Below are positions 3,419 through 49,200 of a DNA stretch of 64,000 bases, piece after piece. Made by a program: the position numbers and the translations under genes. Under the pieces are notes generated by a model. The model was not told the origin of the DNA. It saw only the letters and a program-made list of their open reading frames with translations, and did not search any database. The DNA lies in sequence record KJ019152.1; one strand, written 5' to 3'. The number at the start of each line of letters is the position of its first letter. The first letter of the stretch is position 1.

Positions 3419-4213
3419 ATGACATTTTCATTTAATCATATGGGCAACTTGGGGCATCTGGGAAACCAGATGTTTCAGTATGCCGCACTCATTGGTATGG
3501 GGGCTAAGCATGGGAGGAGTATTTGTATCCCCCATAAACAAAGTTTTGGGCAATCATACTACCAGGATCTTCGTAGTAATATCTACGATGCTTTCAACCT
3601 CTCACCCAATGGTGTAGGTATCAGTAGGTTCCCCACAGTTCAGGAAGGTAGTTTCCACTTTGATGAAAACTTATTTGAGAACCCACCAGATGAGAACTGT
3701 AACCTCTATGGATTCTTCCAGAGTGAAAAGTGGTTCTCACATATCAAAGAAGGTATTAGGAAAGAGTTCACTCTAAAGGATGAGTACCGGGAAGTGGCAC
3801 AACTGATGAGAGAACAACTCTCTGGTCAGGTTGTTGCTATTCATGTTCGTAGAACTGACTACCTATCCAATCCAAACCACGGAGCATTGGGTTTAGATTA
3901 CTATGAGAAGGCACTGGAGTTGGTTCCTAATAACCTTACAGTAGTTGTATTCACTGATGATCCAGAGTGGGCTAAAGAACAACCACTCTTTCCAGATGAT
4001 AGGTTCTTTGTATCAGAGACAGACTGTCCCTATACAGACCTTGCTCTTATGAGTATGTGTGATTATCATATTATTGCCAACAGTTCATACTCTTGGTGGG
4101 GTGCATACTTATCTGATAGTAAGAAAGTAATTGCTCCTAAACAGTGGTTTGGGGAACCACTTAAAACAAATAACCTGAAAGATCTTTATTGTGATGGGTG
4201 GGTGAAACTATGA
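3419..4213 (+). CDS. GT11 alpha-1,2-fucosyl(colitosyl)transferase
   Basis: GHLGNQMFQYA, AIHVRRTDY, VFTDDPEW, IANSSYSWWGAYL. Confidence 0.9.
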   Translation: MTFSFNHMGNLGHLGNQMFQYAALIGMGAKHGRSICIPHKQSFGQSYYQDLRSNIYDAFNLSPNGVGISRFPTVQEGSFHFDENLFENPPDENCNLYGFFQSEKWFSHIKEGIRKEFTLKDEYREVAQLMREQLSGQVVAIHVRRTDYLSNPNHGALGLDYYEKALELVPNNLTVVVFTDDPEWAKEQPLFPDDRFFVSETDCPYTDLALMSMCDYHIIANSSYSWWGAYLSDSKKVIAPKQWFGEPLKTNNLKDLYCDGWVKL

Positions 4214-25210: not shown

Positions 25211-25585
25211 ATGAATACATATGGTTCTCCCGAAGGTTATCTCTTTAACCTTCATACCTGCTCAGCATCAGAAGCGAAGCGAATGTGGAAAGAATCTATA
25301 AAGAATGATTGGAAACATAAATGTGCTTATTGTGGATCGGAACATGAAATTACTTTAGATCATATAGTACCCAAAGCGAAAGGGGGTACTAGTCATACAA
25401 CCAATGTCGTAGCTTGTTGTCGTTCTTGTAACGGGAGTAAGGCATATGAGGATTGGATTATCTGGTATATTCAACAGCCATTCTTCACTGAAGAGAGGAG
25501 GGAGGCTATTGAAAAGTGGATGGAGAAGGGCCTCCTCAACAATAACTTAGTTGCATATCCACCCAGAAGAAATGTCGTTTATTGA
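25211..25585 (+). CDS. HNH endonuclease (CxxC...DH...CxxCN)
   Basis: CAYCG...TLDHIVPKAKGG...NVVACCRSCNGSK. Confidence 0.85.
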   Translation: MNTYGSPEGYLFNLHTCSASEAKRMWKESIKNDWKHKCAYCGSEHEITLDHIVPKAKGGTSHTTNVVACCRSCNGSKAYEDWIIWYIQQPFFTEERREAIEKWMEKGLLNNNLVAYPPRRNVVY

Positions 25586-25801: not shown

Positions 25802-28800
25802 ATGATCTCAACAGCGACTAAGATTAAATTTAAAAGGTCTGGTGTAGCCGGACGTAGACCCTCCTTAGCTGATCTTCAGTTAGGTGAATTGGGGATCAAT
25901 TATAACGATGGTAAACTATTTTTCCGACAGGAAAATGAAGTAGTTGGCTCTCGTATCATTGAACCTGGACAGGGTGATGTAATCGGTAAGACTATTTTCG
26001 TATCCACAAAGGGTAACGATAACAATAGTGGTCTTAACGAAAGAGATGCCAAGAGAACTGTTAAAGCGGCCGCCGCAGTAGCAGAACCTGGTGACTCCAT
26101 CAAACTGTATCCAGGTCAGTACATCGAAGATAACCCTATCGTATTTAAGGATAGGGTATCTGTAGAGGGTATGGAGCTTCGTAACGTTCTCGTTACTCCA
26201 GCCAACCCCAGTAAAGACTTGTATCAAGTTGGTGAGGCGTTCCACGCTACCAACCATTCCTTTGTGTCCAATAGGGATTCAACAGATGGTGCCTCTATTA
26301 TCACCTATCGTCCTCTAGAGGGAACTGCGTCTGACAGGTATTTTGACGCGGCTAGACTCATCAGGGACAATCTTAGCTTCATTGCTAACGAGACAGTAGG
26401 TTTCCTAACCAGTGGATATTCAGGCTTTGCCGCTGGTCAGAGATCACAGGACGCTGCTCGTGCTCTAGAACTAAACAAGAACTTCATAGTAGAAGAAGCA
26501 TTTCAATATATCAACTCTCCTGATTATACAGGAGCCACATACTTCAACCCAGACCCAGCACAGTGTAAGAGAGACCTAGGAAATATCATTGATGGTTGGA
26601 GATATGATCTCATCTCTGATGGTAACACCAGATCTACTGGTCTTGGTCTAACCTACTACGCACCTATTCCCTTTGTGAATAGTGCTAATGTTGCTGACCT
26701 TGTATACAACAGAAATAACGGTGATGTTCTAATTGAAACCGACGTAGATACACAGGTTTCAGTTGGTGAGAAGATCAAACTACAGGATATCAGACTAGAG
26801 TGTGGTTCCTACAATAACGACTTCTTTATCACTGGTTTCAAGTATGATAACACCAGTGGTATTGGAACAGTTAATCTACCCTTTATCCATAACGTCAAGG
26901 TTGGAGACCTTGTTAAGTTTGATGGTTTAGAGTTTGATTGTCCTGCCTATGGTGCCATTGAATATGGTATCCAAGACTTCAAGTATAATGAAACTACTGG
27001 TGGAAGTGTTGTCACACTCACCGAAGATCACGATCTAAAGATTGGTGACACCATTGAACTAAGAGACCTTCAGTTCGATTGTCCCGCCTATGGTGGTGAC
27101 TTCACTAACATCATCAACCTAGAATACAATAAGACCAGTGGTCAGGGTGTTATCACATATGACAAACCCGCCGATCTCAAGTCTGGTGACGTTGTTATCC
27201 TCTATGACCTCACACTAACTTGTGATGCTTATGGTAACGCTATCTCAGTTACTGATTTCTCTTATGATAACTTCACTGGTATCACTGAAGTAGAAGTAAA
27301 TAGACCCCACAACCTCCGTCCCGGAGACCTAATCAAACTAGAGAACCTTAAGTTCTCTTGTGATTCCTACCTTAATGAAACATACAAGGTCTCTAACTTT
27401 GTATATAATGAGAGCACTGGTGATAGTGTCCTCACCCTAACTGAACCACATAGTTTAGTTGCTGGTAAGAACGTCAGACTTGCTGACCTAGTTTTCTCCT
27501 GTAACTCCTATGTTCCAACCGCTAAAGCAATCTCTGATTTCCAGTATGATGAAGTAGTTGGTATCTCTACTATTACTCTAGCATCTCCACACAACTTATC
27601 AGTTGGTGAGCAGTTCAGACTAGAGGACCTAGTATTCTCCTGTAACTCATACTCCTTCACTGATATTCCTATCATTGATGCACCATATGATAATGTAACT
27701 GGTTATGTAACCCTATCGTTCTCTGGTGACCACGGACAACAGGTTGGTGAGAGAGTAAGACTCAGAGATATTGAGTACTCCTGCCCTGGTGGTTCAGGTA
27801 TCACTACAACCTTGTTCCCCGATGGAACCTTTGGTTATGAGTTTGAAATCCTAAGTGTTCCAAACACTAAGAAGATGATTCTTAATGTTGGCACCTCCAC
27901 TATTGAACACTCCTATGTGAGTGGTGGTACTGCTACCGTTGGTATTACAACTACTATCTTCCCTGATGGAACACAAGGTTTCGACTTCAATGTATCCAGT
28001 GTTAATAGTTCCACTGTTATCGAAGCAAGTGTTGGTATTTCTACCATCGCTCACAACTATGTTTCTGGTGGATCATTATTCGTTGGTTTCACTACCACAG
28101 TATTCCCCGATGGAACACAAGGTGATACCTTCAGAGTTAATTCTATTCCTTCTAGCACTCAAATCAGTGTTAATGTTGGTGTATCTTCTATCGCCCATAC
28201 TTTCGTATCCGGTGGTACAGCAACTGACCTAGACTCTTTCATCCCTGTATCTGGTTTCACCTACAATGAAGGTGACGGAACTGGACTAGTATCCCTAGAC
28301 AAGGCACACAACCTAGTGGTTGGTGACTCTTTTGTTCTAGAGGATCTTAAGTTCAACTGTAACTCCTACAGAACAGGTGGTACTTCTACTATTGATATCA
28401 CTAACTTTGAGTATGATAAGGTAACCGGACTATCTACAGTCACACTATCTTCTTCACACAACCTACATGTTAATGATACCGTAGCACTATATGATATCAA
28501 GTTCTCTTGTCCTGGTGGTTCAGGTATTACAACTAATATCTTCCCCGATGGAACCAGAGACAACTTCTATGATGTAGTTGCTGACCTAAACCCCAACCAG
28601 ATTATTGTTCGTGTTGGTAAGTCTGACATTACTCACACATACGCTAGTGGTGGTAGTCTATCCGTTGGTATCACTACTAACATCTTCCCTGATGGAACCA
28701 GACCTTCTGGTGACTTCTTCCAGGTCATCTCTGTCCCCTCTACCAAGTCTGTTCTAACTCAGGTTGGTCTATCCTCTATCGCCCACTCATACGCAAGTGG

Positions 28801-31800
28801 TGGTAAGTTCTACACTGGTATCACTACCAATGTATTCCCACAGGTATTCACTGACCCCAACATCAAGGTAACCAACGCTGTATATGACGAAGTATCTGGT
28901 GTTATCACCATTACTACTAACAAGGCACACGGACTTACCGCTACCGCACCTGTTCTACTACAGGACCTAAACTTCTCTTGCCTCTCTGGTGGTGTAGGAA
29001 ACACCCCAGGCAACCTTGTATTCCCCAGGAACCAGGAAGTTTATGATGTTGTGTCCGTTCTATCTACTACACAATATACGATCAATGTAGGTCCTTCTGA
29101 CTTCGCTCACGCATATGTTGATGGTGGTACTTCTACCACACAGAACATCACTAAGGCATCCTACAACAAAGGAACTGGTGATCTAACAGTAACCCTAGAC
29201 AAGCAACACGGTTATTCAGTTGGTGATCGTGCTAGTGTGGTTGATCTCCTCTTCTCCTGTCAGTCTGGTGGTCCTAACAACCAACCTGGAACACTTCTAT
29301 TCCCTCGTCCTACTGATGAGTATGAAGTTCTATCCGCAAGTGGTAAGACACTCACAGTTAATGTTGGAGCGTTCCCATCACTAGTTCATACCTATAAGAA
29401 TGGTGGATCACTAACCTATAGTTCTACTGTACTTCCTGTAAGTAACGCAGTTTATGATCAATCAACTGGAGTTCTAACACTTACCACATCAATTGCACTA
29501 GGGGCACCTGTTGGTTCTACCATTAAGATGCAGGGTCTAAACTTCTCCTGTGCCTCTGGTGGTCCTGGTAATGACGCTGGTGCTATTGTATTCCCAAGAC
29601 TAGACACCCCTACCTTCAAGGTTAAGGAAGTCAAGAGTGGTGTATCCTATGTTATCAATGTAGGAACCTCTACACTCTCACACACATATACATCTGGTGG
29701 TTTCTCCTCACTCAAGAAGTTGAAGAACGACCCCAATATTTTCAAAGTTATCGACACCCCAACACCTAGTAAGGTTATTACTAATGTAGGTGTCTCATCT
29801 ATCGTTCATGACTATGTGAGTGGTGGTAATATGTTCGTGGGTATCACCACTAATGTATTCCCTGATGGAACTCGCCCTGATGGAAGTAGGTTCGAAGTTA
29901 TCTCCGCCCTATCACCCAACCAGGCACTCATCAACATCGGTGTTTCTACTATCACCCACAACTACGATAGTGGTGGTAGGATGCAGTATGGTACTACCAA
30001 TGAGAGACCTGTTCTAGACTTCCTATACGATGGTCAGACTGGTATCTCCACTGTAACTATTAGAGGAACTCATGGTTTGAACCAGGGTGACCTAGTGAAA
30101 CTCAGAGGTCTTGAGTTCGCTTGTACTAACTCACCTGGTATTACAACTACTATCTTCCCAGATGGAACTGCCGCTGGTCTCAATATCTACAAGGTTACTG
30201 AGATTATTAGTAACAGTACCTTCAAGACAAATGTAGGTAGAGTTGGATTCGATCATACTTACATCCAAGGTGGTTCCGCTTTCGTTGGTATCACTACTAA
30301 CATCTTCCCAGATGGAACACAAGGTTACAACTATACAGTTGCCGCCATTCCTAATAAGAATCAGGTAACAGTTGATGTGGGTATCTCCAGTATCCAACAT
30401 GATTATATTCGTGGTGGATCACTATTCTCTGGTAAGACTAACGAGAGAGATATCGCAGACTTCAAGTATGATCACATCTCTGGTGATGCGGTTCTTACCT
30501 TCAGAAAGGCACAGAACTTATTCACACAAGATCTAGTAAAACTTAAGAACCTTCAGTTTGATTGTCCAAACTCTACTGGTATCACTACTACTCTCTTCCC
30601 AGACGGAACCAGAAGTAACCTCTTCCTAATCAAGGAGAGACTAAACCCAACACAGTTCAAACTCAATGTTGGCACTTCACCATTCGGTCATGACTATGTG
30701 AGAGGAACAGGTCAGGCATTCGTTGGTATCACTACTAACATCTTCCCTGATACCAAGACACAACCAAGTAAGTTATTCAAGGTTGTTGATGTCCCAACTC
30801 CTACTACTATCTCCGCCAAGATTGGTGTATCCACTATCTCCCACTCATATGTTAAGGGTGGTAAGGTATTCGTTGGTATTAACACTGATATCTTCCCTGG
30901 AGATGAGCAAGTATCACCACTAGGTGACACATATACAGTTCAGAGTATCACTAAAGATGGTGAGTTGGTTATCAATGTTGGACTATCTTCTATCAGTCAC
31001 TCCTATGGTGGCGGTGGTAAGGTTCTATATGGACAGAGTTCTGGTAACAACCTACAACATATCACTGGTCCTGGTGTCCTAGATGCAACCATCGCCGCTG
31101 TGGACTTCGAGAAACAGGTAGCAATCAACGCACTAAACAACAGACCTTGGGGTTCATTCGTTCCTGAAGAGACTGCTGTTGTGGAGGCGTTCGCCTATGA
31201 TAACCAGACTGGTTTCGGAACAGTAACCGCTAGGGGAATCAACGTCAACACTGGTGACACCATCAGGATGAGTGACATTCAGTTTGTTTGTTCTGAGGAG
31301 TACGCAGGTGTAACCACTACCTTCTTCCCTGATAATACTAGACCAGAGGGTCAGTACTTTAGAGTAGAAAGAAGAATCAACATCGATGAGTTTGAAGTTA
31401 ATATTGGTGTTTCTACTATCAAACACGTATTCAACTACGAAACAGGTGGTAACGTATATCGTTACAGACAGTCTATTCTAGATGTTAACTACGATAGATC
31501 CAGTGGTATCACTAGTATCCGAGCAACCAAGCATGGTTACAAGGCAAAAGATATTGTGGAACTAGGTGATATCGAGTTCGATTGTCCCGTATTCAAACCT
31601 CAATATGACATTGAGAACTTTGTTTATGATAACACAACTGGTCTATCCACAGTTACTACTACTGTAGATAACACTATCAAGGTAGGTGACAATGTAAAAC
31701 TAGCAGACATCAAACTAGAGTGTCCTCCATATGGTAACCAGAGAGTTATTGATAACTTTGTTTATGATAACAAGAGTGGTCTTTCCACCATATCACTAAC

Positions 31801-34800
31801 AGCAGCACACGGACTCAACCTAAGACCTAGACCTTCTGTTTCTATCTCTACCGCCCTCTATGATAACCAGACTGGTATCCTAACCGTTACCACCAATGCT
31901 GACATCAACTTCACCGATAGAAGTGGTCAGGGTGTTCAACTCAGTGGTCTAAGGTTCTCCTGTGACTCCGCTGGTTTCCCTGGAACTCTCACCTACCCTG
32001 AAGAGAATCTAGTTTATGATATCCTAGAGATTCAGTCTCCTAGTAAGTTTAAGATTAATGTTGGTCTCTCCACTATCGCTCACGAGTATGTGAATGGTGG
32101 TGCCGCTACTAAGGTTGATAGATTCGATGTGAAACTACAGGGTATCAAGTTTGATTGTCCCGCCTATGGAAACACAATCGATGTTACTAACTTCCTATAC
32201 GATCAGAGAAGTGGTAACTCACTAGTTACCGTAGATAAGGCACACAAACTATCTGTTGGTGATAACATCAAACTAGCGGATCTCAAGTTCCAATGTGCTC
32301 CATATGGTAACGATTACAATGTTCTAAACGCAGATTACGACAACACAACTGGTATTATTACAGTAACCACTAACCAAAACATCAACGGTGTTGGTGTTGG
32401 TGATACTATTCGCCTCTCCAGACTACAGTTTGATTGTGTAGGTAGTGGTCCTGAGTATAATATCACTAACGTATTCTTCAATACTGGTAACAGATCAGTT
32501 ATTCTCACAGTTCCTGAAAGACCAATTGGTCTAAACCCAGGTGATGACATTAAACTAACCAATATGTCATACCTAGAAGGTGGTAGTGGTAATGTAGTTG
32601 CGTATCCAGACGGAAGAGATTCGAGTCTAAACATCTTCCGTATCAATGATGTTCAACCTAACTCCATTCTCCCTGGATACTTCGATGTAACCACAGCGTT
32701 CCCCAATGTTAAGGATCCTTTCGCGATCTTCAACAATACTGGTAGACTAACCACTGGTATTACTACTAACATCTACCCTGAGAATGTAGGTGCTGAAGGT
32801 GGTTTCTATGAAGTTATCCGCCTAAGACAAGATAACCAGTTTGAGATTCAGGTAGGAACCTCTACTATCACTCACAACTATGTGAGACAAGGACAGATGT
32901 TTACTGGTGTAACCACCAACTTCTTCCCTGGTAACCTACAGAACTCACCTAGAGGAAACATCTTTGAGATTGTGGAAGTTCCCACAGCAACACAGGTGAG
33001 AATCAATGTAGGTGTATCTTCTATCTCTCATAGTTATGATAGTGGTGGTCAGATGTTTGTTGGTATTACTACTAACATCTTCCCTGATGGAACCAGAGGT
33101 AACCTATTCCCAGTTGTTGGAGTGGCAAATACTCTCACCCTAAGAATCGACGCTGGTGTATCCAGTATTCCTCACAACTATGTTTCTGGTGGAGAACTAT
33201 TCGTAGGTATTACAACTAATATCTTCCCTGGTAACTCACAGAACTCACCAAGAGGTAGTATCTTCAAGGTTCTATCTAAGGATAACGAGTGTGGTGCTGA
33301 TAGATTCACTATCAATGTTGGTGTATCTTCCATCACTCACGGTTATGTTGAGGGTGGAACAGTCACCACTGGTGTTACAACTAACAAGTTCCCTGATGGA
33401 ACACACGGATTCAAGTTCCCTGTTATCGATGTTCTAGATGACAACTACTTCACCGTGAATGTTGGTACTTCTACTATCACTCACAACTATATCTCTGGTG
33501 GTTTCACTAGAAGACTTGAAGTTCCTATCAATAGTTTCGTATATGATAGAGTTTCTGGTCTATCCACAGTGGGTATCCAAAGTCACAGAATGAATATCGG
33601 TGACCTTGTGAAACTTCGTGATGTGAAGTTCAACTGTGATCCATATGGTGGAGAAAAGACTATCTCTGGTGTTGTTTATGATAATACCTCTGGTAGAATG
33701 ACCGTTAACACCACTGGTTCTCATAGTCTAAACATCAATGATGTTGTGAAACTCTCCAATATTCAGTTGGATTGTTCCCCATATGGTAACGAGAGAACTA
33801 TTACCGCCGCCACCTACAACAGAAACAATGGAAACCTAAGTGTTCAGGTATCTGAACCTCACAACCTCAAGATTAGTGAGAATGTGAAACTTAAAGGTTT
33901 AGAGTTCTCCTGTTCCTCAGAACACGCAGGTGTGACAACAACAATCTTCCCAGATTCAACCGCACCTTCTCTAAACATCTACGCCATCCAGAGTATCACC
34001 AACTCCACAACCTTCATGGTTAATGTTGGAACCTCTACTATCAGTCACAACTATGTTTCTGGTGGTTCCGCTTTCGTAGGTATCACAACTAACATCTTCC
34101 CAGGTGATAGCCAGAACTCCCCCAGAGGTTCTTTCCTCAGTGTGGTAGATATCCCAGCATCAGACGCCTTCGTGGTGAATGTAGGGGTTTCTACTATCTC
34201 TCACGGGTATGTTAGAGGTGGATTGGTTCAGACAGGTATTACAACTGATGTATTCCCTGATGGAACACAGAGTGATTTCTTCAAGATTGAAGATGTCCCT
34301 AGTAATAATACAGTTGTAATCAACGCAGGTATCTCTTCTATCATCCATAGATACAACTCTGGTGGTTTCGCCGCCAAGTATGTTACCTATCAGTCCAATA
34401 ACTCACAACTACTTGATAGTTCTGTTATTAGAGTGAGTGGTGATTGTATGGCAGTTGGTGAGAGAGTTGAAGAACTCGCAGGTATTGTTACCTCCATCAT
34501 CAAGAATGGTCCTTCAATCGCACCTGGTGGTATTCCAGTAGATGTGGTAAGTGCATCCTACGACCAGTCTGGTGGAGCACTATCAGTCACAGTCAAAGAC
34601 GCAATTGACCTCACACCAACTAACATAGTTAGAATCGAAGGTCTTATCTTCGAGTGTGAGTCCTCTGGTGTAACAAACACTCGTGTATATCCTGACAATA
34701 AGGTATTCAACTATGAGGTTCTATCAGTTCAGTCTCCAACAACCTTCACTATCAATGTAGGTTCTCAGGCAGATATCCCACACACATATGTGAATGGTGG

Positions 34801-37705
34801 AACTGTAAGACCAGGTAACAAGTTTGATGTGGCAACCGCAACCTACAATACTGAAAATGGTATTGTGAGAGTTACTACCACTGAAGATAACTACTTGGTT
34901 CTTGGTAGAGGAGTTAACCTACAGGGTCTAAACTTCTCCTGTACCTCTGGTGGTCCTAACAACAAACCTGGAACACTAACCTTCCCCGACAAAACACCAA
35001 CCAATGTAACCGCCGCCACATATGATAGTGTGACTGGTGTATTACGTATCACAACCAACAGACCTCACCAAGCATACAAGGACGCGTTTGTATCCCTAAA
35101 CGGACTAACCTTCACTTGTGATCCAGGTGGTCCTCTAGTATTCCCTAGAAACCCTGATACTAAGTCCTTCAGAGTTACTAAGAGAGTTGATGACTACACA
35201 TATGAGTGTCAGTTGGCACCGACCAATAAGGTTCATACTTATCTAAGTGGTGGTACTTCCTCCACAGGAAACGGAAACTTCAGAGTTTCTCGTCTCATTG
35301 ATACAAAGACCTTCGAAGTCACAATGGTTCCTCTAGATCTACCACATACCTATGTAAATGGTGGTTCCGCCGCTAGTGTATTCACTAGACAGATCATTGA
35401 TGGAATCAACATCAACACTAGGAAGTGTGCTAGAGACGTTAGACGTATCTACCTCGCAGTGGCACACGATATCACTCGTGGTGGTAACTGGAAGTGTGTT
35501 GAAGGAGCGAAACTCTACTACGATAACGTGGGTCAAACCAAGTTTATCTCTGGTGGTGAAGTAAATCAAACCGTTGAGGCACTTGACTTCTCCCTAAACA
35601 TTGTTAGATGTTTAATCAACAACGTAACATGGGGTGGAGTTCCAAGAGGATATCTCACTAAGGGTGAGAGAAGTGAACTAAGAATTCCATCTTCAGCTAA
35701 GACTTCAGTGGTTGGTTTCAGACAACAACTACTTTCCAACCAATACACTACTCAGAAGAAGAGTATTTCTGGTATGGTATACGATAACCTTACGGGTATC
35801 GCAACCGTCACCACTAAACTCTCACATGAACTCATCAAGTATGATGGTATTCAACTCTCAGATATTGAGATGAGATGTACTGGTAGTCCAAGGATTACCA
35901 CCAATGTATTCCCTGATGGAACACAAGGTGAGATCTTTGAGGTTATGGAAACTCTAGATGATAGAGTATCATACATCGTAACTGACGCGTCATACACCAA
36001 CACCACTGGTAAGTTGGTAGTAACAACAACAGGAAACAATGATATTCCTGTTGGATCAAGAGCAAAACTAGATGGTTTACTCTGGACTTGTTCATACGAT
36101 CCTTCAAAACAACTTAAGTTCCCAGAGAACAGGAAGTTCCGTTATGAGGTTATCGCAAAACCAGATGGTACAACACTAGAGTTCAATGTTGGTATCTCTA
36201 CGATTCCACACACATTTGTTCCAGCTCCTATAGATGTTGAATACACAGTCAAGGAGGATCCAGTTAAGTTTAAGGTTCATGTTGGTACAGTTTCCTTCCC
36301 ACACACCTACTTCGGTGGTGGAACAGTATGGCACAAACTACCATTCACTCCACCTTTCACCCAAACACAGATCAAGGACGTATCACAACAGAAAGATCCA
36401 GTCCAGTTCTCTAACAATACTCCTAACGGATGTGCTAATGTATTCTCCGCTATCAGTAATTGTATTGGTGTTGTTACTAGTATCGTAGCAAATGGATTAG
36501 AAGGATCAGGTATCTCCACAACTTATCCAGGTAATGATGGTAAAGGTGTTCCAACTATGGATGAGATGCCTTCACAGGGTGTTGGTAACATTATCAAAGG
36601 TCCATACATCAGAAACTGTACGAACTTCGTTCCCAAGTCTATTGGTATGAGAATGGATGGTTTCGACGCGGAACCTGGTGATGAAATCTCCAATGGTGTT
36701 CAAGGTTCATCTAACGTTGACTCCTTCACCCAGTTCAACCCTGGTGGTGTTGGTTGTTCCATCTCTAACGGAACCTACCAACAGTTGGTTTCTATCTTCA
36801 CTATCTGTTGTGATGAAGCAATCGTATGTGACTCTGGAGCACAACTCGACCTCACTAACTCCAACTCTTCCTTCGGTAGATTGGGTCTAGTCGCAAGAGG
36901 TATTGGTGATAAACTCTCCAAGTGTATCGACAGATATACTGGTATCGTCGCCAAAGAGGCATCAATCGAAGATGACCTAGTTGTTGTGAAGGGTATTGGT
37001 GATAAGAGACCCTACGATGGTCAGGGTATTTTCTTCGGAGAACTCTTCAGGGATGTGGTTAGTATCGAAGTTCTGGACGGTGGTTCAGGTTACAACGATG
37101 ATATTCCACCTAACGCGTTTGTCGCAGAACCTACTGGTCCCGCTGGTATTAAGGCGGAAGTTTCACCAACAGTCAGAGATGGTGTTGTTGTTTCTATCGA
37201 GGTTATCGCAAATGGTAACCAATACAGAGAGAAATTCCCTGAGGTTGTAATATCACCTCCTAAGAGTCCTCTTGGTAGAACCGCAAAAGCAAGGGCAATT
37301 ACCGAACCTCTCTACTATAATGTAGAAAGTTCTTCCCCACCTGAAGAGGGTACAACTAGTATCATTTTCAAACAGCGTCTAAATAATACCGTATCGGTAG
37401 GCACAACTGTATTCTTCTCTAGATTGAGTCTACAGATTGCCTCCTCTCACTCCTTCGAATACATTGGTGCTGGTAACAGCATTAACGGAGCAAGACCTTC
37501 TGAAGGTGGAGTTCCAATTAAGGAAAATGAGATCGTGAAGGAAGACGGTGGTTCAATTGTCTATACCTCCACTGACCAGGCAGGTAACTTTAACATTGGT
37601 GACGATTTCGTTATCAACCAGTTCACTGGTACTATCACTGGTAGATCGTTCGATCAATCAGTCCTAAATAAAGTTACTCCACTCATCATCGCCCTAGACA
37701 GTTAA
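25802..37705 (+). CDS. giant virion structural protein (3967 aa) with nested repeat domains
   Basis: Late promoter; fibre-type N-terminus KRSGVAG...LQLGELGINYNDGKLF; split beta-helix; helical bundles; 31 split repeats. Confidence 0.85.
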   Translation: MISTATKIKFKRSGVAGRRPSLADLQLGELGINYNDGKLFFRQENEVVGSRIIEPGQGDVIGKTIFVSTKGNDNNSGLNERDAKRTVKAAAAVAEPGDSIKLYPGQYIEDNPIVFKDRVSVEGMELRNVLVTPANPSKDLYQVGEAFHATNHSFVSNRDSTDGASIITYRPLEGTASDRYFDAARLIRDNLSFIANETVGFLTSGYSGFAAGQRSQDAARALELNKNFIVEEAFQYINSPDYTGATYFNPDPAQCKRDLGNIIDGWRYDLISDGNTRSTGLGLTYYAPIPFVNSANVADLVYNRNNGDVLIETDVDTQVSVGEKIKLQDIRLECGSYNNDFFITGFKYDNTSGIGTVNLPFIHNVKVGDLVKFDGLEFDCPAYGAIEYGIQDFKYNETTGGSVVTLTEDHDLKIGDTIELRDLQFDCPAYGGDFTNIINLEYNKTSGQGVITYDKPADLKSGDVVILYDLTLTCDAYGNAISVTDFSYDNFTGITEVEVNRPHNLRPGDLIKLENLKFSCDSYLNETYKVSNFVYNESTGDSVLTLTEPHSLVAGKNVRLADLVFSCNSYVPTAKAISDFQYDEVVGISTITLASPHNLSVGEQFRLEDLVFSCNSYSFTDIPIIDAPYDNVTGYVTLSFSGDHGQQVGERVRLRDIEYSCPGGSGITTTLFPDGTFGYEFEILSVPNTKKMILNVGTSTIEHSYVSGGTATVGITTTIFPDGTQGFDFNVSSVNSSTVIEASVGISTIAHNYVSGGSLFVGFTTTVFPDGTQGDTFRVNSIPSSTQISVNVGVSSIAHTFVSGGTATDLDSFIPVSGFTYNEGDGTGLVSLDKAHNLVVGDSFVLEDLKFNCNSYRTGGTSTIDITNFEYDKVTGLSTVTLSSSHNLHVNDTVALYDIKFSCPGGSGITTNIFPDGTRDNFYDVVADLNPNQIIVRVGKSDITHTYASGGSLSVGITTNIFPDGTRPSGDFFQVISVPSTKSVLTQVGLSSIAHSYASGGKFYTGITTNVFPQVFTDPNIKVTNAVYDEVSGVITITTNKAHGLTATAPVLLQDLNFSCLSGGVGNTPGNLVFPRNQEVYDVVSVLSTTQYTINVGPSDFAHAYVDGGTSTTQNITKASYNKGTGDLTVTLDKQHGYSVGDRASVVDLLFSCQSGGPNNQPGTLLFPRPTDEYEVLSASGKTLTVNVGAFPSLVHTYKNGGSLTYSSTVLPVSNAVYDQSTGVLTLTTSIALGAPVGSTIKMQGLNFSCASGGPGNDAGAIVFPRLDTPTFKVKEVKSGVSYVINVGTSTLSHTYTSGGFSSLKKLKNDPNIFKVIDTPTPSKVITNVGVSSIVHDYVSGGNMFVGITTNVFPDGTRPDGSRFEVISALSPNQALINIGVSTITHNYDSGGRMQYGTTNERPVLDFLYDGQTGISTVTIRGTHGLNQGDLVKLRGLEFACTNSPGITTTIFPDGTAAGLNIYKVTEIISNSTFKTNVGRVGFDHTYIQGGSAFVGITTNIFPDGTQGYNYTVAAIPNKNQVTVDVGISSIQHDYIRGGSLFSGKTNERDIADFKYDHISGDAVLTFRKAQNLFTQDLVKLKNLQFDCPNSTGITTTLFPDGTRSNLFLIKERLNPTQFKLNVGTSPFGHDYVRGTGQAFVGITTNIFPDTKTQPSKLFKVVDVPTPTTISAKIGVSTISHSYVKGGKVFVGINTDIFPGDEQVSPLGDTYTVQSITKDGELVINVGLSSISHSYGGGGKVLYGQSSGNNLQHITGPGVLDATIAAVDFEKQVAINALNNRPWGSFVPEETAVVEAFAYDNQTGFGTVTARGINVNTGDTIRMSDIQFVCSEEYAGVTTTFFPDNTRPEGQYFRVERRINIDEFEVNIGVSTIKHVFNYETGGNVYRYRQSILDVNYDRSSGITSIRATKHGYKAKDIVELGDIEFDCPVFKPQYDIENFVYDNTTGLSTVTTTVDNTIKVGDNVKLADIKLECPPYGNQRVIDNFVYDNKSGLSTISLTAAHGLNLRPRPSVSISTALYDNQTGILTVTTNADINFTDRSGQGVQLSGLRFSCDSAGFPGTLTYPEENLVYDILEIQSPSKFKINVGLSTIAHEYVNGGAATKVDRFDVKLQGIKFDCPAYGNTIDVTNFLYDQRSGNSLVTVDKAHKLSVGDNIKLADLKFQCAPYGNDYNVLNADYDNTTGIITVTTNQNINGVGVGDTIRLSRLQFDCVGSGPEYNITNVFFNTGNRSVILTVPERPIGLNPGDDIKLTNMSYLEGGSGNVVAYPDGRDSSLNIFRINDVQPNSILPGYFDVTTAFPNVKDPFAIFNNTGRLTTGITTNIYPENVGAEGGFYEVIRLRQDNQFEIQVGTSTITHNYVRQGQMFTGVTTNFFPGNLQNSPRGNIFEIVEVPTATQVRINVGVSSISHSYDSGGQMFVGITTNIFPDGTRGNLFPVVGVANTLTLRIDAGVSSIPHNYVSGGELFVGITTNIFPGNSQNSPRGSIFKVLSKDNECGADRFTINVGVSSITHGYVEGGTVTTGVTTNKFPDGTHGFKFPVIDVLDDNYFTVNVGTSTITHNYISGGFTRRLEVPINSFVYDRVSGLSTVGIQSHRMNIGDLVKLRDVKFNCDPYGGEKTISGVVYDNTSGRMTVNTTGSHSLNINDVVKLSNIQLDCSPYGNERTITAATYNRNNGNLSVQVSEPHNLKISENVKLKGLEFSCSSEHAGVTTTIFPDSTAPSLNIYAIQSITNSTTFMVNVGTSTISHNYVSGGSAFVGITTNIFPGDSQNSPRGSFLSVVDIPASDAFVVNVGVSTISHGYVRGGLVQTGITTDVFPDGTQSDFFKIEDVPSNNTVVINAGISSIIHRYNSGGFAAKYVTYQSNNSQLLDSSVIRVSGDCMAVGERVEELAGIVTSIIKNGPSIAPGGIPVDVVSASYDQSGGALSVTVKDAIDLTPTNIVRIEGLIFECESSGVTNTRVYPDNKVFNYEVLSVQSPTTFTINVGSQADIPHTYVNGGTVRPGNKFDVATATYNTENGIVRVTTTEDNYLVLGRGVNLQGLNFSCTSGGPNNKPGTLTFPDKTPTNVTAATYDSVTGVLRITTNRPHQAYKDAFVSLNGLTFTCDPGGPLVFPRNPDTKSFRVTKRVDDYTYECQLAPTNKVHTYLSGGTSSTGNGNFRVSRLIDTKTFEVTMVPLDLPHTYVNGGSAASVFTRQIIDGININTRKCARDVRRIYLAVAHDITRGGNWKCVEGAKLYYDNVGQTKFISGGEVNQTVEALDFSLNIVRCLINNVTWGGVPRGYLTKGERSELRIPSSAKTSVVGFRQQLLSNQYTTQKKSISGMVYDNLTGIATVTTKLSHELIKYDGIQLSDIEMRCTGSPRITTNVFPDGTQGEIFEVMETLDDRVSYIVTDASYTNTTGKLVVTTTGNNDIPVGSRAKLDGLLWTCSYDPSKQLKFPENRKFRYEVIAKPDGTTLEFNVGISTIPHTFVPAPIDVEYTVKEDPVKFKVHVGTVSFPHTYFGGGTVWHKLPFTPPFTQTQIKDVSQQKDPVQFSNNTPNGCANVFSAISNCIGVVTSIVANGLEGSGISTTYPGNDGKGVPTMDEMPSQGVGNIIKGPYIRNCTNFVPKSIGMRMDGFDAEPGDEISNGVQGSSNVDSFTQFNPGGVGCSISNGTYQQLVSIFTICCDEAIVCDSGAQLDLTNSNSSFGRLGLVARGIGDKLSKCIDRYTGIVAKEASIEDDLVVVKGIGDKRPYDGQGIFFGELFRDVVSIEVLDGGSGYNDDIPPNAFVAEPTGPAGIKAEVSPTVRDGVVVSIEVIANGNQYREKFPEVVISPPKSPLGRTAKARAITEPLYYNVESSSPPEEGTTSIIFKQRLNNTVSVGTTVFFSRLSLQIASSHSFEYIGAGNSINGARPSEGGVPIKENEIVKEDGGSIVYTSTDQAGNFNIGDDFVINQFTGTITGRSFDQSVLNKVTPLIIALDS
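26680..36340 (+). repeat. 31 A-halves (YDxxTG...HxLxxGDxVxLxDLxFxC) and 31 B-halves (GITTxxFPDG...VNVGxSxIxHxYxxGG) in four blocks
   Basis: Hand parse: 15, 11, 3 and 2 pairs at about 26680-31030, 31170-34380, 34530-35380 and 35750-36340. Confidence 0.85.
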
Positions 37706-37709
37706 GATC

Positions 37710-38060
37710 ATGGCAGCAGTTGCTTTAAATACGTTCAAAACGGTCAGGCATTTAGTTTCTGATTCCAATGTGGGGATTTATACATCCCCCATTGGTGTTG
37801 CCTCTATTGTCCTATACGCTCAGGCGACACACGTTGCGAACGATGAAAGTGTATATTTCATTAACTTTTCACATGCTCGTCCCGACGAGGATCCTGTGCA
37901 GTTTGAAATCATTAAGGATGGTCCAGTTATCCCTAATGACGCACTAAACCTATTAACAGGTAGATTAGTTCTCGAAACTGGAGACGAACTTAGAGTATCA
38001 GGAAATACGACCGGAGATGTGAAGGTTGTTGTTTCTATTCTAGAGACTGCAAAGTCTTAA
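37710..38060 (+). CDS. small structural protein coupled to the giant gene
   Basis: 116 aa, predicted beta-rich; 4 bp after the giant gene stop. Confidence 0.65.
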   Translation: MAAVALNTFKTVRHLVSDSNVGIYTSPIGVASIVLYAQATHVANDESVYFINFSHARPDEDPVQFEIIKDGPVIPNDALNLLTGRLVLETGDELRVSGNTTGDVKVVVSILETAKS

Positions 38061-46261: not shown

Positions 46262-49200
46262 ATGGCATATTTACTTTCTAATGGGGGCGTTATTATTAAC
46301 GACTCCAGAGAAATCGTAAATGCTGGGGTTGTAACTGCTACTGCGTTCTTTGGGGACGGTTCTGGTTTATCTGGAATCGCAACCATTTCTGATGGGGGAA
46401 TCTCCATCGGCGACGCAAACATCACTGGAAACTTAAATGTTTCTGGTATTTCTACCGTAGAATTCTTAAACGCTTCTGACATTAATGTCGGCGGTGCTTT
46501 AACAGTCACAGGTGATCTATCTGTCGGTGGTGATTTATCTTTTGATGAGGTTTCTGGTAGAAACCTAAACATCACTGGTATTTCCACACTCGGAACAGTT
46601 AAGATTTCAAATGGCATTGTAACCGCCACTAGTGGCGTTGTTACATATTACGGTGATGGTAGCAATCTAACCGGCATTGACATCACAGATAGTGATGTAA
46701 GACTCAGAAACCTTTCGGTTACTGGTGTCTCTACATTCACAGGTGATGTATCTTTTGGAGCAAACGCTTCTCTAGTAGGCGACCTAACTTCTGGTCGTAA
46801 CGCAAACCTTTCAGGTATTGCGACAGTAAATGATATCTATATTGATAACTTACTTTATGATTCCAACAATAATGTTGGAGCAGCTGGTTCAATTCTTGTA
46901 ACCGCAGGTGGAAAGTTACAGTGGCTACCGCCCGATCAAGCGGGTATTGCTACAGTATTCCAACCAGGAAATACATTCTTTGTTTCTAAGAATGGTGATG
47001 ATAGTAGTGATGGTCTCTCCATGGAGAAATCATTTGCTACCATTTCCTACGCTCTGTCTCAGATTTCATCAGGGACAAACAACGTTCTCTTAATCACCGC
47101 TGGTGATTATGAAGAAGTATTCCCACTATCAGTTCCCGATGGACTGACTGTTAAGGGTGTTGGACAACGTGCGGTTCTAGTTAGACCCACTTCAGCTACA
47201 GAAACCAACGATGGTTTCCAACTTGGTAACGCATCCACAGTTGAAGATTTGACCATTGGTCAGATGTTTAAACCTCAAGGTGCTTCCAATAATAACTACG
47301 CTTTCACATATAGAAGTGGTGCTACCATTTCATCTCGTGGACCTTATGTTTCTAGAGTTACGGTTCTAAACAAAGGTAGCGTAACTTCTACCTCTGACCC
47401 ATTTGGATATGGTTCAGCTGATGCTTATCCAACGACTGCCCCTGGTGGTGCTGGTGTATTGGCTGATGGTAGTGTTCTTAACTCCGCCTCACTAGAAGCC
47501 TCATTCCTACTTAACGAAGTCACCACCTTCACTGCCGGTAACATCGGTATTGATATGGTCAACGGTGCTCGTGTTGAGTGGTTGAATGGTTTCTCCTACT
47601 TCGCATCCGAGGGTGTTAAAGGTAGAGCTGACCAGTCAACTGGTTTGTATGGTGCAGGTAAGACGAGACTAAGAGTTGAGAACGCCTCTGGTGGTCTAGT
47701 CAATGGTAATACCATTGAACTCTATGATATTGATGGCACGACTAGCCTTGCTAGTGGTACTATTGACGGCACCAGTGGTGCATACACGACCCTGACTACT
47801 GGTGGTACTGGTACCTTCGCTATTGCAGGAAGTCGTAAGGCGAAAGCTGCCTCATTCGTTGATACAGCCTCTCTATCTACAACACAAGCCAAATTCGGGA
47901 ATGCTTCACTAGATGTAACTGGTCAGTCTACTGATTGTATCAATGTTGATCCAAGCAGTGACTTCGGTTTCGGTACTGGTGACTTTACAGCTGAATTCTG
48001 GTTGTATAGAACATCAGCTACTGCTGGTGCTACTATTCTCGATATGAGAGATGCAGCTGATACTGATTCAGCTCTATCTATTAGAGAGAACACTAGTGAT
48101 GTTATTGAAGTTCTTGTCGGCAACTCTGTTGTTCTAACTTCATCCACAAGTGCTATTGGTAATGCCGCTTGGTATCACATTGCTGTTGCCCGTTTGGGTA
48201 GCACAATGGAACTATTCATTAATGGTGCCCAGGAAGCTTCAGCATCCAATTCATCTGACTTAGGTCTAAGCCAGTCACTCACCTTTGGTGCTGACTATGC
48301 TAACGCCAATGGTACTATTGCGTTCTTAGATGAACTCCGTATCGAGAAGGGTGCTGCTAAGTACACGAATCCGTTTACTCCTTCCACTGTACCCCTTGAG
48401 GGTGACCGTGGTACAGCTATCCTACTCCACTTTGATGGATCAAATGGAGCAACTGAAGCTCCTGATGATATTCAGATATTCCAGGATATCCGTATCAGTG
48501 GTGGTAACACAGCTGATAGACTATCACTTGCTGACTACAGTCAGTTTGGTGCTGAGTTGCGTTCCTCTGGTTGTGCTGTTGAGTATGGTAACAAAGGTGT
48601 CGTCGGAGACGGTGCTGGTGTTGCTCTAAGACTCATCGGTATTAACTTCAGTTTCGTAGGTGCCCTAGGTGATCTAACTAACGATCCAAACCTAGCCGTT
48701 CAGGCTAATGAAGTTACAGAAACCAACAATGCTGAGGTATCTTTCACCAGTATTGATCAAGGTGGTGACTTCCGTGTTGGTGAATCCTTCTATGTTAACC
48801 AGGAAACTGGTGATGTATCATTCAACAACACAACAACTGATCTAACCTCACTATCTAGTCTAACCATCACTGATGGTACTAACAACTCACTTATCACTCC
48901 TACCTCTGGTAGATTTGGTAATGTTCAGATCTCTGGACAGCAAGTTGCTTCTGTATCTGGTGACCTAGACCTAGTAACCGCTGGTGGTGGTGAAGTTAAC
49001 ATCTACGGTAATACTAACGTTGTTGGTATTCTAACCGCACAGGTTGTTGAGATCAACGCTATCCAGAAGGGTGATACTTCTATCGCTCTAGATGATACCG
49101 GTACTGATGGTACTATCCGGTTTAACACCGATGGTTCTGAGGCAGGTAGATTCACTAAGGATAACGACCTTGCAGTAACACACAACTTCCGCGTTGGTGG

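What the first reader, a model, noticed from the sequence alone, without database searches (positions are those of the whole stretch)
25985..36900. The whole repeat tree appears inserted into one loop of a beta-helix, with an in-window paralogue as control
Seen: the N-terminal part (IFVSTKGNDNNSG...GQYIEDNPI...ASIITYRP, to about 26310) and a late part (IIKGPYIRNCTNF...QLVSIFTICC, from about 36593) look like two halves of one parallel beta-helix separated by about 3430 aa. In the 46262 fibre the equivalent stretch is contiguous (YAFTYRSGATISSRGPYVSRVTV, about 47298-47360). The insert holds two helical units (QCKRD...GN...YY and KCARD...GGN...YY) that are themselves interrupted by barrel blocks. 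Inference: three tiers of nesting, helix > helical bundle > barrel tree.
Basis: partly seen in the sequence, partly recalled or inferred. Interest (0 to 1): 0.7.

Follow-up and report, generated by a model that had tools for sequence, protein, structure and literature searches.

The report
Giant nested insert in phage beta-helix
A 3,967-residue tail-fibre-type protein of a marine cyanophage is a small beta-helix in which one surface loop has been expanded by domains inserted inside domains, about ten layers deep, and its helical inserts resemble the host's light-harvesting pigment proteins.

Summary
Confirmed and extended. The window is Synechococcus phage ACG-2014f. ORF 25802-37705 is intact (3,967 aa). 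Its first 172 and last 377 residues are collinear with natural relatives in which the two parts are contiguous (P-SSM2, 617 aa; metagenomic P0052, 527 aa).

P0052 models confidently. Its solved-structure matches with E below 0.001 are right-handed beta-helix proteins. The junction falls in a loop. A family profile aligns across that junction to the in-window paralogue (46262), at 98.7% probability.

The 3,425-aa insert holds two helical modules (U-V) and about 31 small beta domains, each made of an A half and a B half. Read as brackets, all four A/B arrays are perfectly nested (2 of 200,000 shuffles), up to 8 deep. One U, one A and one B are split at complementary profile positions. That makes about ten layers; the deepest published case I found is six.

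Relatives use three loops of the same scaffold for the same cassettes.

Unexpected lead: the helical cassette matches Pfam 'Phycobilisome protein' in relatives. It keeps the C-x-R-D bilin-attachment motif in 863 units (97/82/98%).

Function is inferred: a virion fibre or adhesin.

The parts
25802..37705 (+). Whole gene: intact ORF of 3,967 aa, a tail-fibre-type structural protein (RefSeq 'hypothetical protein')
   Evidence: PHROG 3442 and 17885 'tail fiber protein'
25802..25981 (+). aa 1-60: N-terminal motif shared with the N-termini of long-tail-fibre distal subunits of other T4-like phages; probable attachment end
   Evidence: PHROG 35830, 19966 and 1699 at aa 5-48, E about 1e-6 to 1e-7; tblastn hits in phiR1-RT g250 and Ac42 gene 37
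25982..26317 (+). aa 61-172: N half of the beta-helix (cap motif and first rungs)
   Evidence: Profile hit E=5e-41; the same profile hits the paralogue at E=2.4e-18; DUF1565 sub-threshold; maps to P0052 aa 5-167
26318..26695 (+). aa 173-298: helical unit U1a, the first part of a split U; carries C-K-R-D at aa 255
   Evidence: U profile positions 11-53 at aa 246-288; Pfam Phycobilisome sub-threshold at aa 209-270
26696..31021 (+). aa 299-1740: array 1, 15 A halves and 15 B halves in the order A8 B3 A2 B2 AB AB A B3 A B2 A B3; a balanced bracket word of depth 8, lying inside U1
31022..31186 (+). aa 1741-1795: helical unit U1b, the second part of the split U
   Evidence: U profile positions 54-112 at aa 1748-1807, exactly complementary to U1a
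31187..34369 (+). aa 1796-2856: array 2, a balanced bracket word of depth 5. It includes one A split around an inner A-B pair (aa 1985-2006 and 2109-2121) and a degenerate A-B pair at aa 2214-2318
34370..34549 (+). aa 2857-2916: helical unit V1, which closes helical module 1
   Evidence: V profile positions 33-59 at aa 2879-2905, E=3e-4; BLAST to S-SKS1 and S-CAM7
34550..35368 (+). aa 2917-3189: array 3 (AB, then AABB), lying directly in the beta-helix loop between the two helical modules
35369..35770 (+). aa 3190-3323: helical unit U2 (uninterrupted), with C-A-R-D at aa 3209
   Evidence: U profile positions 1-134, E=9e-61
35771..36325 (+). aa 3324-3508: array 4. One A, then a B split at profile position 24/22 around an inner A-B pair
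36326..36571 (+). aa 3509-3590: helical unit V2, which closes helical module 2
   Evidence: maps to the long helix 419-442 of the P0029 model
36572..36976 (+). aa 3591-3725: C1, the second half of the beta-helix (resumes at GPYIRNCTNF)
   Evidence: rungs with a 22-aa period in the P0052 model
37007..37441 (+). aa 3736-3880: C2, a small beta domain common in cyanophage structural proteins; the second insertion hot spot of relatives lies just before it
   Evidence: PHROG 701, 19630 and 460; site-2 statistics
37442..37702 (+). aa 3881-3967: C3, the conserved C-terminal domain, also present in the paralogue
   Evidence: Profile hit to paralogue aa 795-858, E=3.2e-13; BLASTP E=2e-6
37710..38060 (+). 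Conserved 116-aa partner ORF, found directly downstream of six of the seven orthologues fetched
   Evidence: PHROG 1276; synteny (S-CAM7 instead has a 54-aa ORF after a 190-nt gap); the S-SCSM1 copy is annotated 'virion protein'
46907..47611 (+). Paralogue ORF 46262-52132, aa 216-450: the same beta-helix with the junction contiguous (the control)
   Evidence: hhalign probability 98.7%, E=1.9e-16
47963..48352 (+). Paralogue aa 568-697: Laminin_G_3 (ConA-like) domain between the C1-like and C3-like parts, at the family's second insertion hot spot
   Evidence: Pfam E=2.7e-14; C3 at aa 795-858

Best explanation
The gene encodes a virion tail-fibre-type protein built by recursive domain insertion.

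The host is a scaffold of about 540 aa: an N-terminal attachment motif, a right-handed beta-helix, and two small C-terminal domains. One beta-helix loop, between ASIITYRP and GPYIRNC, carries a 3,425-aa excursion that makes up 86% of the protein.

At its top level the excursion holds four units in series:
- helical module 1 (U1...V1);
- two barrel units (array 3);
- helical module 2 (U2...V2).

Each small beta domain of about 100 aa is made of an A half and a B half. Further copies are inserted at the A|B hairpin, and once each inside an A and inside a B. This gives trees up to 8 deep. Array 1 sits in a loop of U1; arrays 2 and 4 sit between U and V.

Shown here: collinearity with contiguous natural relatives; a loop at the junction in a confident model of a natural relative; complementary split-profile coordinates; the bracket grammar; and the same cassettes at three scaffold loops in relatives.

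Inferred:
- each A packs with its bracket partner B;
- both ends of the protein are reserved for attachment and folding, so growth could only occur inside loops;
- the excursion projects sideways as a bushy, multivalent binding or encounter-enhancing appendage;
- the array grew by duplication and self-insertion of cassettes and shrinks by recombination between repeats (the US26 isolate lacks 2,602 aa in frame).
For: Identity and context:
- The window is 100% identical to KJ019152.1, and 44 records match at 99% or more.
- The gene lies in a fibre/baseplate gene cluster.
- The S-SCSM1 orthologue is annotated as a virion protein, from a proteome study.

Contiguous relatives:
- P-SSM2 (617 aa): the N piece covers aa 2-163 and the C piece starts at aa 173.
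- In 65 of 131 representatives the junction is 10 aa or less.

Fold:
- P0052 model: pLDDT 88.3, pTM 0.79, junction between strands 161-165 and 178-184.
- Its PDB matches with E below 0.001 are tailspikes, tail fibres and pectin- or glycan-active enzymes. Single-domain helices align over 260-310 columns, more than either half alone.
- In BFVD, P0052 matches piece 1 (170 columns) and piece 3 (367 columns, rmsd 1.6) of the ACG-2014f giant.
- PDB sequence hits to the cap motif: 3vst_A E=2e-5, 8fqc_P1 E=0.0027.

Paralogue: hhalign 98.7% across the junction.

Nesting:
- U1 is split at profile positions 11-53 | 54-112. One A is split at 1-22 | 27-37 and one B at 2-24 | 22-45.
- All four arrays are balanced bracket words in only 2 of 200,000 shuffles.
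- Family-wide, 35 of 49 arrays are balanced, against a mean of 6.2 and a maximum of 14 in shuffles.
- With two bracket types, 39 of 76 proteins are well-formed, against a mean of 5.1 and a maximum of 13.
- S-CAM7 differs from the window only by whole A...B pairs.

Model of a natural small version: P0029 (N-U-(AB)-V-(AB)(AB)-C) has pLDDT 84.3 and pTM 0.80. U is five helices, A+B is nine strands, V is one long helix, and the beta-helix strands resume after the insert.
Against: - No coordinates, contact maps or PAE were available. Packing of the N half on C1, and of each A on its bracket partner, is inferred from secondary structure, confidence scores and fold matches.
- No deep array was modelled.
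- A test of shared duplication history between bracket partners was weak (r=0.25, 33 of 5,000 permutations for the giant; not significant for S-CAM7) and did not beat simple order pairing.
- 14 of 49 family arrays are not balanced. These are mostly fragments or missed divergent units, but this was not proven.
- The US26 isolate would leave five A halves and U1a without partners.
- Oligomeric state and position in the virion are unknown. No evidence of function exists for this protein itself.
Confidence: 0.8

Rival explanations
1. Beads on a string. The N part and C part are independent domains that happen to be adjacent in short relatives. In the giant they are separated by a linear shaft of tandem repeats, and nothing is nested.
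For: I could not inspect coordinates. Long runs of A only (8 in a row) and of B only (5 in a row) look like ordinary tandem repeats. Repeat-rich shafts are the norm in phage fibres.
Against: The junction lies between strands inside a continuous high-confidence beta region (pLDDT 92-96) of a model whose fold matches span both halves. The numbers of A and B are equal within each of four arrays, and the order is never negative (2 of 200,000 shuffles). Split units have complementary profile coordinates. Insert lengths at the other hot spot come in steps of about 100 aa, that is one A plus one B.
Confidence: 0.08
2. Trimeric fibre shaft. A and B are two kinds of shaft repeat that fold only in a trimer, as in T4 gp34 or gp37. 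The bracket-like order is a by-product of duplication history.
For: The N-terminal motif resembles long-tail-fibre distal subunits. Monomer models can mislead for trimeric fibres. Conserved His and Cys in the units recall metal sites of fibres; that comparison is from my own knowledge.
Against: A single A+B pair occurs alone as an insert of about 100 aa in many relatives. It models as a compact nine-strand unit in a monomer at pLDDT around 85-90. Duplication alone does not explain equal A and B counts in every array, conserved between ACG-2014f and S-CAM7.
Confidence: 0.1
3. Artefact: a mis-assembled or decaying gene.
For: Repeats invite assembly errors. One isolate (US26) has a 2,602-aa shorter gene.
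Against: The ORF is intact in 43 or more isolate genomes at 99% identity or above and in S-CAM7 (4,168 aa). About 28 metagenomic clusters hold forms of 3,090-4,318 aa. DNA repeats within the gene are only 60-88% identical, so collapse is unlikely.
Confidence: 0.02

Closest known systems
Right-handed parallel beta-helix tailspikes and tail fibres (for example Agrobacterium phage 7-7-1 fibres 9rkv, Klebsiella K2-2 tailspike 8iqe, Geobacillus virus E2 ORF18 7chu)
   Same: The fold of the scaffold, the N-terminal cap motif, and a location among phage fibre genes. The same module is predicted in T7-like cyanopodovirus tail fibres.
   Different: 86% of the chain is an excursion from one loop. No Pfam beta-helix family reaches threshold. 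No catalytic site was identified. TM-scores to solved structures are low (0.2-0.3) because the partners are multi-domain proteins.
SI3 insertion in the trigger loop of cyanobacterial RNA polymerase beta' (nested sandwich-barrel hybrid motifs)
   Same: Small beta domains are inserted recursively into each other inside a loop of a host fold. A survey of 2.7 million domains describes this as the most complex case it found: eight domains, six levels (PMC13114784).
   Different: Here there are about 31 barrels plus two helical modules, with barrels nesting 8 deep (about ten layers counting the hosts). Two cassette types host each other, and the insert is 6.3 times larger than its host. No sequence similarity was found. 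Fold similarity of A+B to that motif was not tested.
Phycobiliproteins and bilin-binding globins (Pfam PF00502; BBAGs of PMC10151467)
   Same: PF00502 passes its gathering score in six of eight relatives rich in U-V modules. The only PDB sequence hits of two such relatives are phycocyanin alpha and ApcA1, aligned on their chromophore Cys-84 and Cys-81. C-x-R-D is 97/82/98% conserved over 863 U units.
   Different: The domains are inserted modules of a phage structural protein, often in tandem (up to 12-13 copies). The window's own units are below threshold (13.7 bits), and a small profile of the window's clade finds nothing in the PDB. There is no evidence of a bound bilin.
T4-type long-tail-fibre distal subunit (gp37-like)
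   Same: The first 45 or so residues.
   Different: Nothing beyond the N-terminal motif matches.
In-window paralogue ORF 46262-52132
   Same: Beta-helix N half, C1 and C3.
   Different: The junction is contiguous. The scaffold is embedded in a long fibre. A ConA-like domain sits at hot spot 2, and a Peptidase_S74 chaperone domain at the C-terminus. It has no A, B, U or V units.

Membership tests
Right-handed parallel beta-helix (pectin-lyase-like) phage fibre/spike proteins | N-terminal cap motif of the fold | tested here: met
DUF1565 is sub-threshold at aa 70-126 (17.3 bits against 20.3).
Right-handed parallel beta-helix (pectin-lyase-like) phage fibre/spike proteins | Three-dimensional fold matches solved beta-helices | tested here: met
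   Tested on the natural contiguous relative P0052, not on the giant itself. The 26 PDB matches with E below 0.001 are all beta-helix proteins.
Right-handed parallel beta-helix (pectin-lyase-like) phage fibre/spike proteins | Glycan-cleaving active site | not tested
   No catalytic residues could be assigned without coordinates.
Right-handed parallel beta-helix (pectin-lyase-like) phage fibre/spike proteins | Homotrimer | not testable with these tools
   Only monomer predictions were available.
Cyanomyovirus tail-fibre family (PHROG 17885 / 3442) | Profile match at both ends of the protein | tested here: met
   PHROG 17885: N piece E=2.5e-111, C piece E=1.7e-123.
Recursively nested domain insertion (RNA polymerase SI3 type) | The insert lies inside a loop of a host fold whose two halves are otherwise contiguous | tested here: met
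Recursively nested domain insertion (RNA polymerase SI3 type) | Halves of an inserted domain flank further copies (A1-B-A2 pattern, repeated) | tested here: met
   Split-profile coordinates; bracket grammar.
Recursively nested domain insertion (RNA polymerase SI3 type) | The inserted unit has the sandwich-barrel hybrid fold | not tested
   No sequence hit in the PDB or Pfam for the A+B profile. No separate model of A+B could be searched.
Phycobiliprotein / bilin-binding globin (PF00502) | Pfam gathering score reached | tested here: inconclusive
   Not met by the window's protein (13.7 bits against 22.2). Met by relatives sharing the U profile: 61.2, 44.6, 42.2, 40.0, 36.1 and 32.3 bits.
Phycobiliprotein / bilin-binding globin (PF00502) | C-x-R-D chromophore motif at the homologous position | tested here: met
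   There are exactly two such motifs in 3,967 aa, one per U unit (aa 255 and 3209). Conservation is 97/82/98% over 863 units. The tool's alignments place the Cys on phycocyanin Cys-84 and ApcA1 Cys-81. The motif's role is described in PMC10151467.
Phycobiliprotein / bilin-binding globin (PF00502) | Covalently bound bilin | not testable with these tools
   This needs spectroscopy or mass spectrometry of native material.
Fibres with a C-terminal intramolecular chaperone (Peptidase_S74) | S74 domain at the C-terminus | tested here: not met
   Absent from the giant; present in ORFs 43771 and 46262.

The most novel reading that the evidence does not exclude
The helical cassettes are phycobiliprotein-derived, bilin-binding domains displayed on the virion. 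Cyanophage fibre proteins would then carry from one to a dozen or more chromophore-binding globin modules, each keeping the C-x-R-D attachment motif. These modules could be the unrecognised substrates of the bilin synthesis and lyase genes that cyanomyoviruses carry (ho1, pebS, pcyA, cpeT). Their benefit has so far only been guessed to lie in the host's antenna.
Probability: 0.25. Interest if true: 0.95.

Novelty: new variant of a known kind. Interest (0 to 1): 0.8.

Why it matters
Domain insertion is common, but a recent survey of 2.7 million domains found inserts consistently smaller than their hosts, with at most six nesting levels. This protein has about 33 inserted domains. Barrels nest eight deep inside a helical module that is itself inside a beta-helix loop. 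The insert is six times the size of its host. The N half of the beta-helix is translated about 3,400 residues before the half it must pack against.

It gives a natural series, from 0 to about 3,600 inserted residues at one loop, for studying how such proteins fold and evolve. It also shows a way for phage fibres to grow when both termini are needed for assembly.

If the helical cassettes bind bilins, a long-standing puzzle becomes testable on virions: why cyanophages carry pigment-synthesis genes.

Tried and rejected
- Pfam on the whole giant: no family at E of 0.01 or less.
- Pfam and PDB sequence searches with a 13-member A+B profile: nothing meaningful.
- PDB search with a 7-member U profile of the window's clade: no phycobiliprotein hit.
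- Mantel test of shared history between bracket partners: weak and non-discriminating.
- Foldseek of the 1,030-aa P0029 model against the PDB: the top-ranked and high-probability matches were again beta-helices. Low-probability, low-TM matches to unrelated viral glycoproteins and an insecticidal toxin were treated as noise and not pursued.
- A and B profiles do not hit the small downstream ORF.
- DNA repeats in the gene are old (60-88% identity), so a recent expansion is rejected.
- Bilin genes in ACG-2014f: none are annotated in NC_026927.1 at 1-50,000 or 168,159-213,659. The remaining 118 kb or so was not examined.
- Literature searches found no description of this architecture or of phycobiliprotein-like domains in phage fibres.
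- Considered and rejected: assembly artefact, and a simple tandem shaft (see the rival explanations).
Full report
IDENTITY AND CONTEXT. The window is the last 64 kb of Synechococcus phage ACG-2014f (KJ019152.1, 100% identity), a T4-like cyanomyovirus. Forty-four records match at 99% or more. ORF 25802-37705 is one open frame of 3,967 codons. RefSeq calls it 'hypothetical protein'. It lies upstream of three genes called 'baseplate wedge subunit' and downstream of an HNH endonuclease gene. PHROGs place both of its ends in a 'tail fiber protein' family. Its first 45 or so residues resemble the N-termini of long-tail-fibre distal subunits of unrelated T4-like phages. The S-SCSM1 orthologue is annotated as a virion protein, from a virion proteome study.

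OBSERVATION. The gap between ASIITYRP (aa 164-171) and IIKGPY (aa 3597 onward) is 3,425 aa.

TWO HALVES OF ONE BETA-HELIX. I looked for natural proteins in which the halves are adjacent.

- tblastn of the N piece and of the C piece found both in one gene of many cyanomyoviruses, at very different spacings.
- Orthologues are P-SSM2 617 aa, S-T4 836, S-SKS1 928, ACG-2014f isolate US26 1,365, S-SCSM1 1,478, S-CAM7 4,168 and SynMITS9220M01 1,167. Six of the seven are followed directly by a conserved small ORF of 109-116 aa; S-CAM7 instead has a 54-aa ORF after a 190-nt gap.
- In P-SSM2 the N piece covers aa 2-163 and the C piece starts at aa 173.
- A library search with the C piece gave 1,388 cluster representatives at E of 1e-3 or less. 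Among the best 150, the junction could be measured in 131. It is 10 aa or less in 65, 11-40 aa in 30, 41-100 aa in 5, and 186-3,508 aa in 31.
- The smallest complete form, P0052 (527 aa), was modelled with 30 natural relatives as its alignment: pLDDT 88.3, pTM 0.79. The giant's aa 7-171 and 3599-3965 map to P0052 aa 5-167 and 175-524. The insertion point is therefore the loop between strands 161-165 and 178-184.
- The 26 PDB fold matches with E below 0.001 are right-handed beta-helix proteins. Single-domain helices (pectin methylesterase, rhamnogalacturonan lyase, Pel9A) align over 260-310 columns, more than either half could supply.
- In BFVD the same model matches piece 1 (170 columns) and piece 3 (367 columns, rmsd 1.6) of the ACG-2014f giant. 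It also matches T7-like cyanopodovirus tail fibres.
- The family profile aligns to the in-window paralogue at aa 216-450, straight across the junction (probability 98.7%, E=1.9e-16). The C-terminal domain profile hits paralogue aa 795-858 (E=3e-13).
- The paralogue is a sound control for this loop. It does carry its own Laminin_G_3 domain further on.

ANATOMY OF THE INSERT. Iterated profiles found 31 A units of about 38 aa and 32 B units of about 45 aa, counting split parts. They occur only in this ORF of the window. Five non-repeat helical stretches resolve into two kinds of unit, U and V.

- U1 is split. Profile positions 11-53 lie at aa 246-288 and positions 54-112 at aa 1748-1807, on either side of array 1.
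- One A is split at positions 1-22 | 27-37, and one B at 2-24 | 22-45. Each split surrounds an inner A-B pair.
- Relatives show the stages. Some have N-U-V-C with no barrels (P0013, P0023, P0025; inserts of about 190-206 aa). S-T4 has N-U-(AB)-V-C. S-SKS1 has N-U-V-(AB)(AB)-C. S-SCSM1 has two U-V modules, one enclosing AAABBB.
- A natural 1,030-aa form, P0029, modelled at pLDDT 84.3 and pTM 0.80. The beta-helix strands run up to residue 167. Five helices make up U. Nine strands make up A+B, with a two-residue turn at the A|B junction. One long helix makes up V. Two more A+B units follow, and the beta-helix resumes at residue 665.

GRAMMAR. Minimal inserts elsewhere in the family are one A plus one B, about 100 aa. 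I therefore read A as an opening bracket and B as a closing bracket.

- The giant's four arrays are all balanced and never go negative. Array 1 reads A8 B3 A2 B2 AB AB A B3 A B2 A B3. The depths are 8, 5, 2 and 2. Only 2 of 200,000 shuffles do as well.
- S-CAM7 has the same array 1. It differs elsewhere only by whole A...B pairs.
- Across the family, 35 of 49 arrays with four or more units are balanced, against a mean of 6.2 (maximum 14) in shuffles.
- With U and V as a second bracket type, 39 of 76 proteins are fully well-formed, against a mean of 5.1 (maximum 13). Failures are mainly fragments or proteins whose divergent V or B units were not detected.
- Some relatives show the reverse order, with up to ten U-V modules enclosed in one A...B pair.
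- The deepest barrel in the window lies inside seven others, inside U1, inside the beta-helix loop. That is about ten layers.

FAMILY-WIDE PICTURE. Three loops of the scaffold accept cassettes.

- Site 1 is the loop of this finding.
- Site 2 lies between C1 and C2. Thirty-five of 138 representatives carry 94-2,407 aa there. The outermost unit is usually A...B.
- Site 0 lies after the cap helix of the N half. Thirteen representatives carry 173-2,653 aa there, made of U-V modules.
- Giant forms of 3,090-4,318 aa, at 72-99% identity to the window over the queried stretch (aa 3509-3967), form about 28 clusters in marine metagenomes. More distant relatives reach 5,882 aa.
- DNA repeats inside the gene are 60-88% identical, so the tree is old.

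HELICAL CASSETTE.

- Pfam 'Phycobilisome protein' (PF00502, cut-off 22.2 bits) is only a faint hit in the window (13.7 bits, aa 209-270).
- It scores 61.2, 44.6, 42.2, 40.0, 36.1 and 32.3 bits in six of eight U-V-rich relatives. It is also precomputed for about 20 of the 74 long relatives.
- The only PDB sequences matching two of these relatives at E below 1 are phycocyanin alpha and ApcA1. The unit's conserved Cys aligns on Cys-84 and Cys-81.
- Over 863 U units in 156 proteins, the columns C, +2 R and +3 D are 97%, 82% and 98% conserved.
- The giant has exactly two C-x-R-D motifs, one in each U.
- C-x-R-D is the bilin-attachment motif of phycobiliproteins and of self-assembling bilin-binding globins (PMC10151467).
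- Homology of the cassette to this globin family is likely. Bilin binding is an open possibility.
- A 7-member profile of the window's own clade did not reach any PDB entry.

HOW IT LIKELY WORKS. Shown: the architecture, its conservation, and its distribution. The rest is inferred, as follows.

- The protein is a virion fibre or adhesin, anchored by its N-terminal motif.
- The termini and the scaffold are needed for assembly, so new modules could only be added in loops.
- Each inserted unit has adjacent termini, so units can be chained or nested without disturbing their hosts.
- The result is a laterally projecting, multivalent mass.
- A preprint reports that S-CAM7, which has the largest known version among isolates, binds host pili more often than two phages that were scored only for pilus binding. 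This is a lead only; no protein was assigned.
- Another preprint reports frequent large deletions in evolved S-CAM7. The genes were not checked.

NATURAL DELETION. Isolate Syn7803US26 has an in-frame loss of 2,602 aa between two B units that share a nine-residue identical stretch. In the bracket model it leaves five A halves and U1a unpartnered. Either much of the tree is dispensable and partly unfolded in that isolate, or the assembly is collapsed. The reads should be re-examined.

LIMITS. No coordinates or contact maps were available. No deep array was modelled. Function is inferred.

REFERRED STEP AND A SLIP. All evidence above comes from tool outputs.

Noticed in passing
window 26318-26695 and 35369-35770 (U units; C-x-R-D at aa 255 and 3209); relatives P0074, P0091, P0108, P0117, P0122, P0204: The helical cassette looks phycobiliprotein-like. 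PF00502 passes its threshold in six of eight relatives tested. The only PDB hits are phycocyanin alpha and ApcA1, aligned on their chromophore Cys. C-x-R-D is conserved at 97/82/98% over 863 units.
   Followed up: partly
L004:2040-6137 (ACG-2014f isolate Syn7803US26) against window 25802-37705: An in-frame natural deletion of 2,602 aa between two B units sharing a nine-residue identical stretch. It would leave five A halves and half of U1 without partners. Either a real tolerated deletion or an assembly collapse.
   Followed up: partly
relatives P0053, P0061, P0108, P0113, P0117, P0122 (site 0); P0040, P0043, P0074, P0091 and L002:3485-5338 (site 2): Two further loops of the same scaffold are insertion hot spots in relatives. 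They hold the same cassettes, up to about 2,650 aa and 12-13 tandem U-V modules.
   Followed up: yes
window 47963-48352: The control paralogue carries a Laminin_G_3 (ConA-like lectin) domain between its C1-like and C3-like parts, at hot spot 2 of the family.
   Followed up: partly
window 37710-38060: A 116-aa ORF starts 4 nt after the giant's stop. It is conserved directly downstream of six of the seven orthologues fetched, including the insert-free P-SSM2 form. It belongs to PHROG 1276 (unknown function). The S-SCSM1 copy is annotated 'virion protein'. It has no A or B similarity.
   Followed up: partly
window about 25211-25585: An HNH endonuclease gene lies directly upstream of the giant gene. 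The same arrangement is seen upstream of the orthologues in S-SKS1 and S-CAM7.
   Followed up: no
window 25802-25945 (aa 5-48): The N-terminal motif is shared with long-tail-fibre distal subunits of Yersinia phage phiR1-RT and Acinetobacter phage Ac42, and with proteins of Vibrio, Ralstonia and Limnohabitans phages.
   Followed up: no
BFVD entries M4SSB6_1, A0A6S4PDB0: The same beta-helix module is predicted at the end of T7-like cyanopodovirus tail fibres that carry a T7 fibre N-terminal domain. The scaffold therefore moves between myovirus and podovirus fibres.
   Followed up: no
window 27671-36229 (A+B units): Five columns are invariant in 13 A+B pairs: Tyr and Gly near the start of A, Cys at the end of A, Pro near the start of B, and His near the end of B. 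This may be a metal or structural site. There is no match in Pfam or the PDB.
   Followed up: partly
L002:2320-3021 (P-SSM2): In P-SSM2 a heme oxygenase gene lies two genes upstream of the orthologue. That orthologue has no U units, so this may be coincidence.
   Followed up: no
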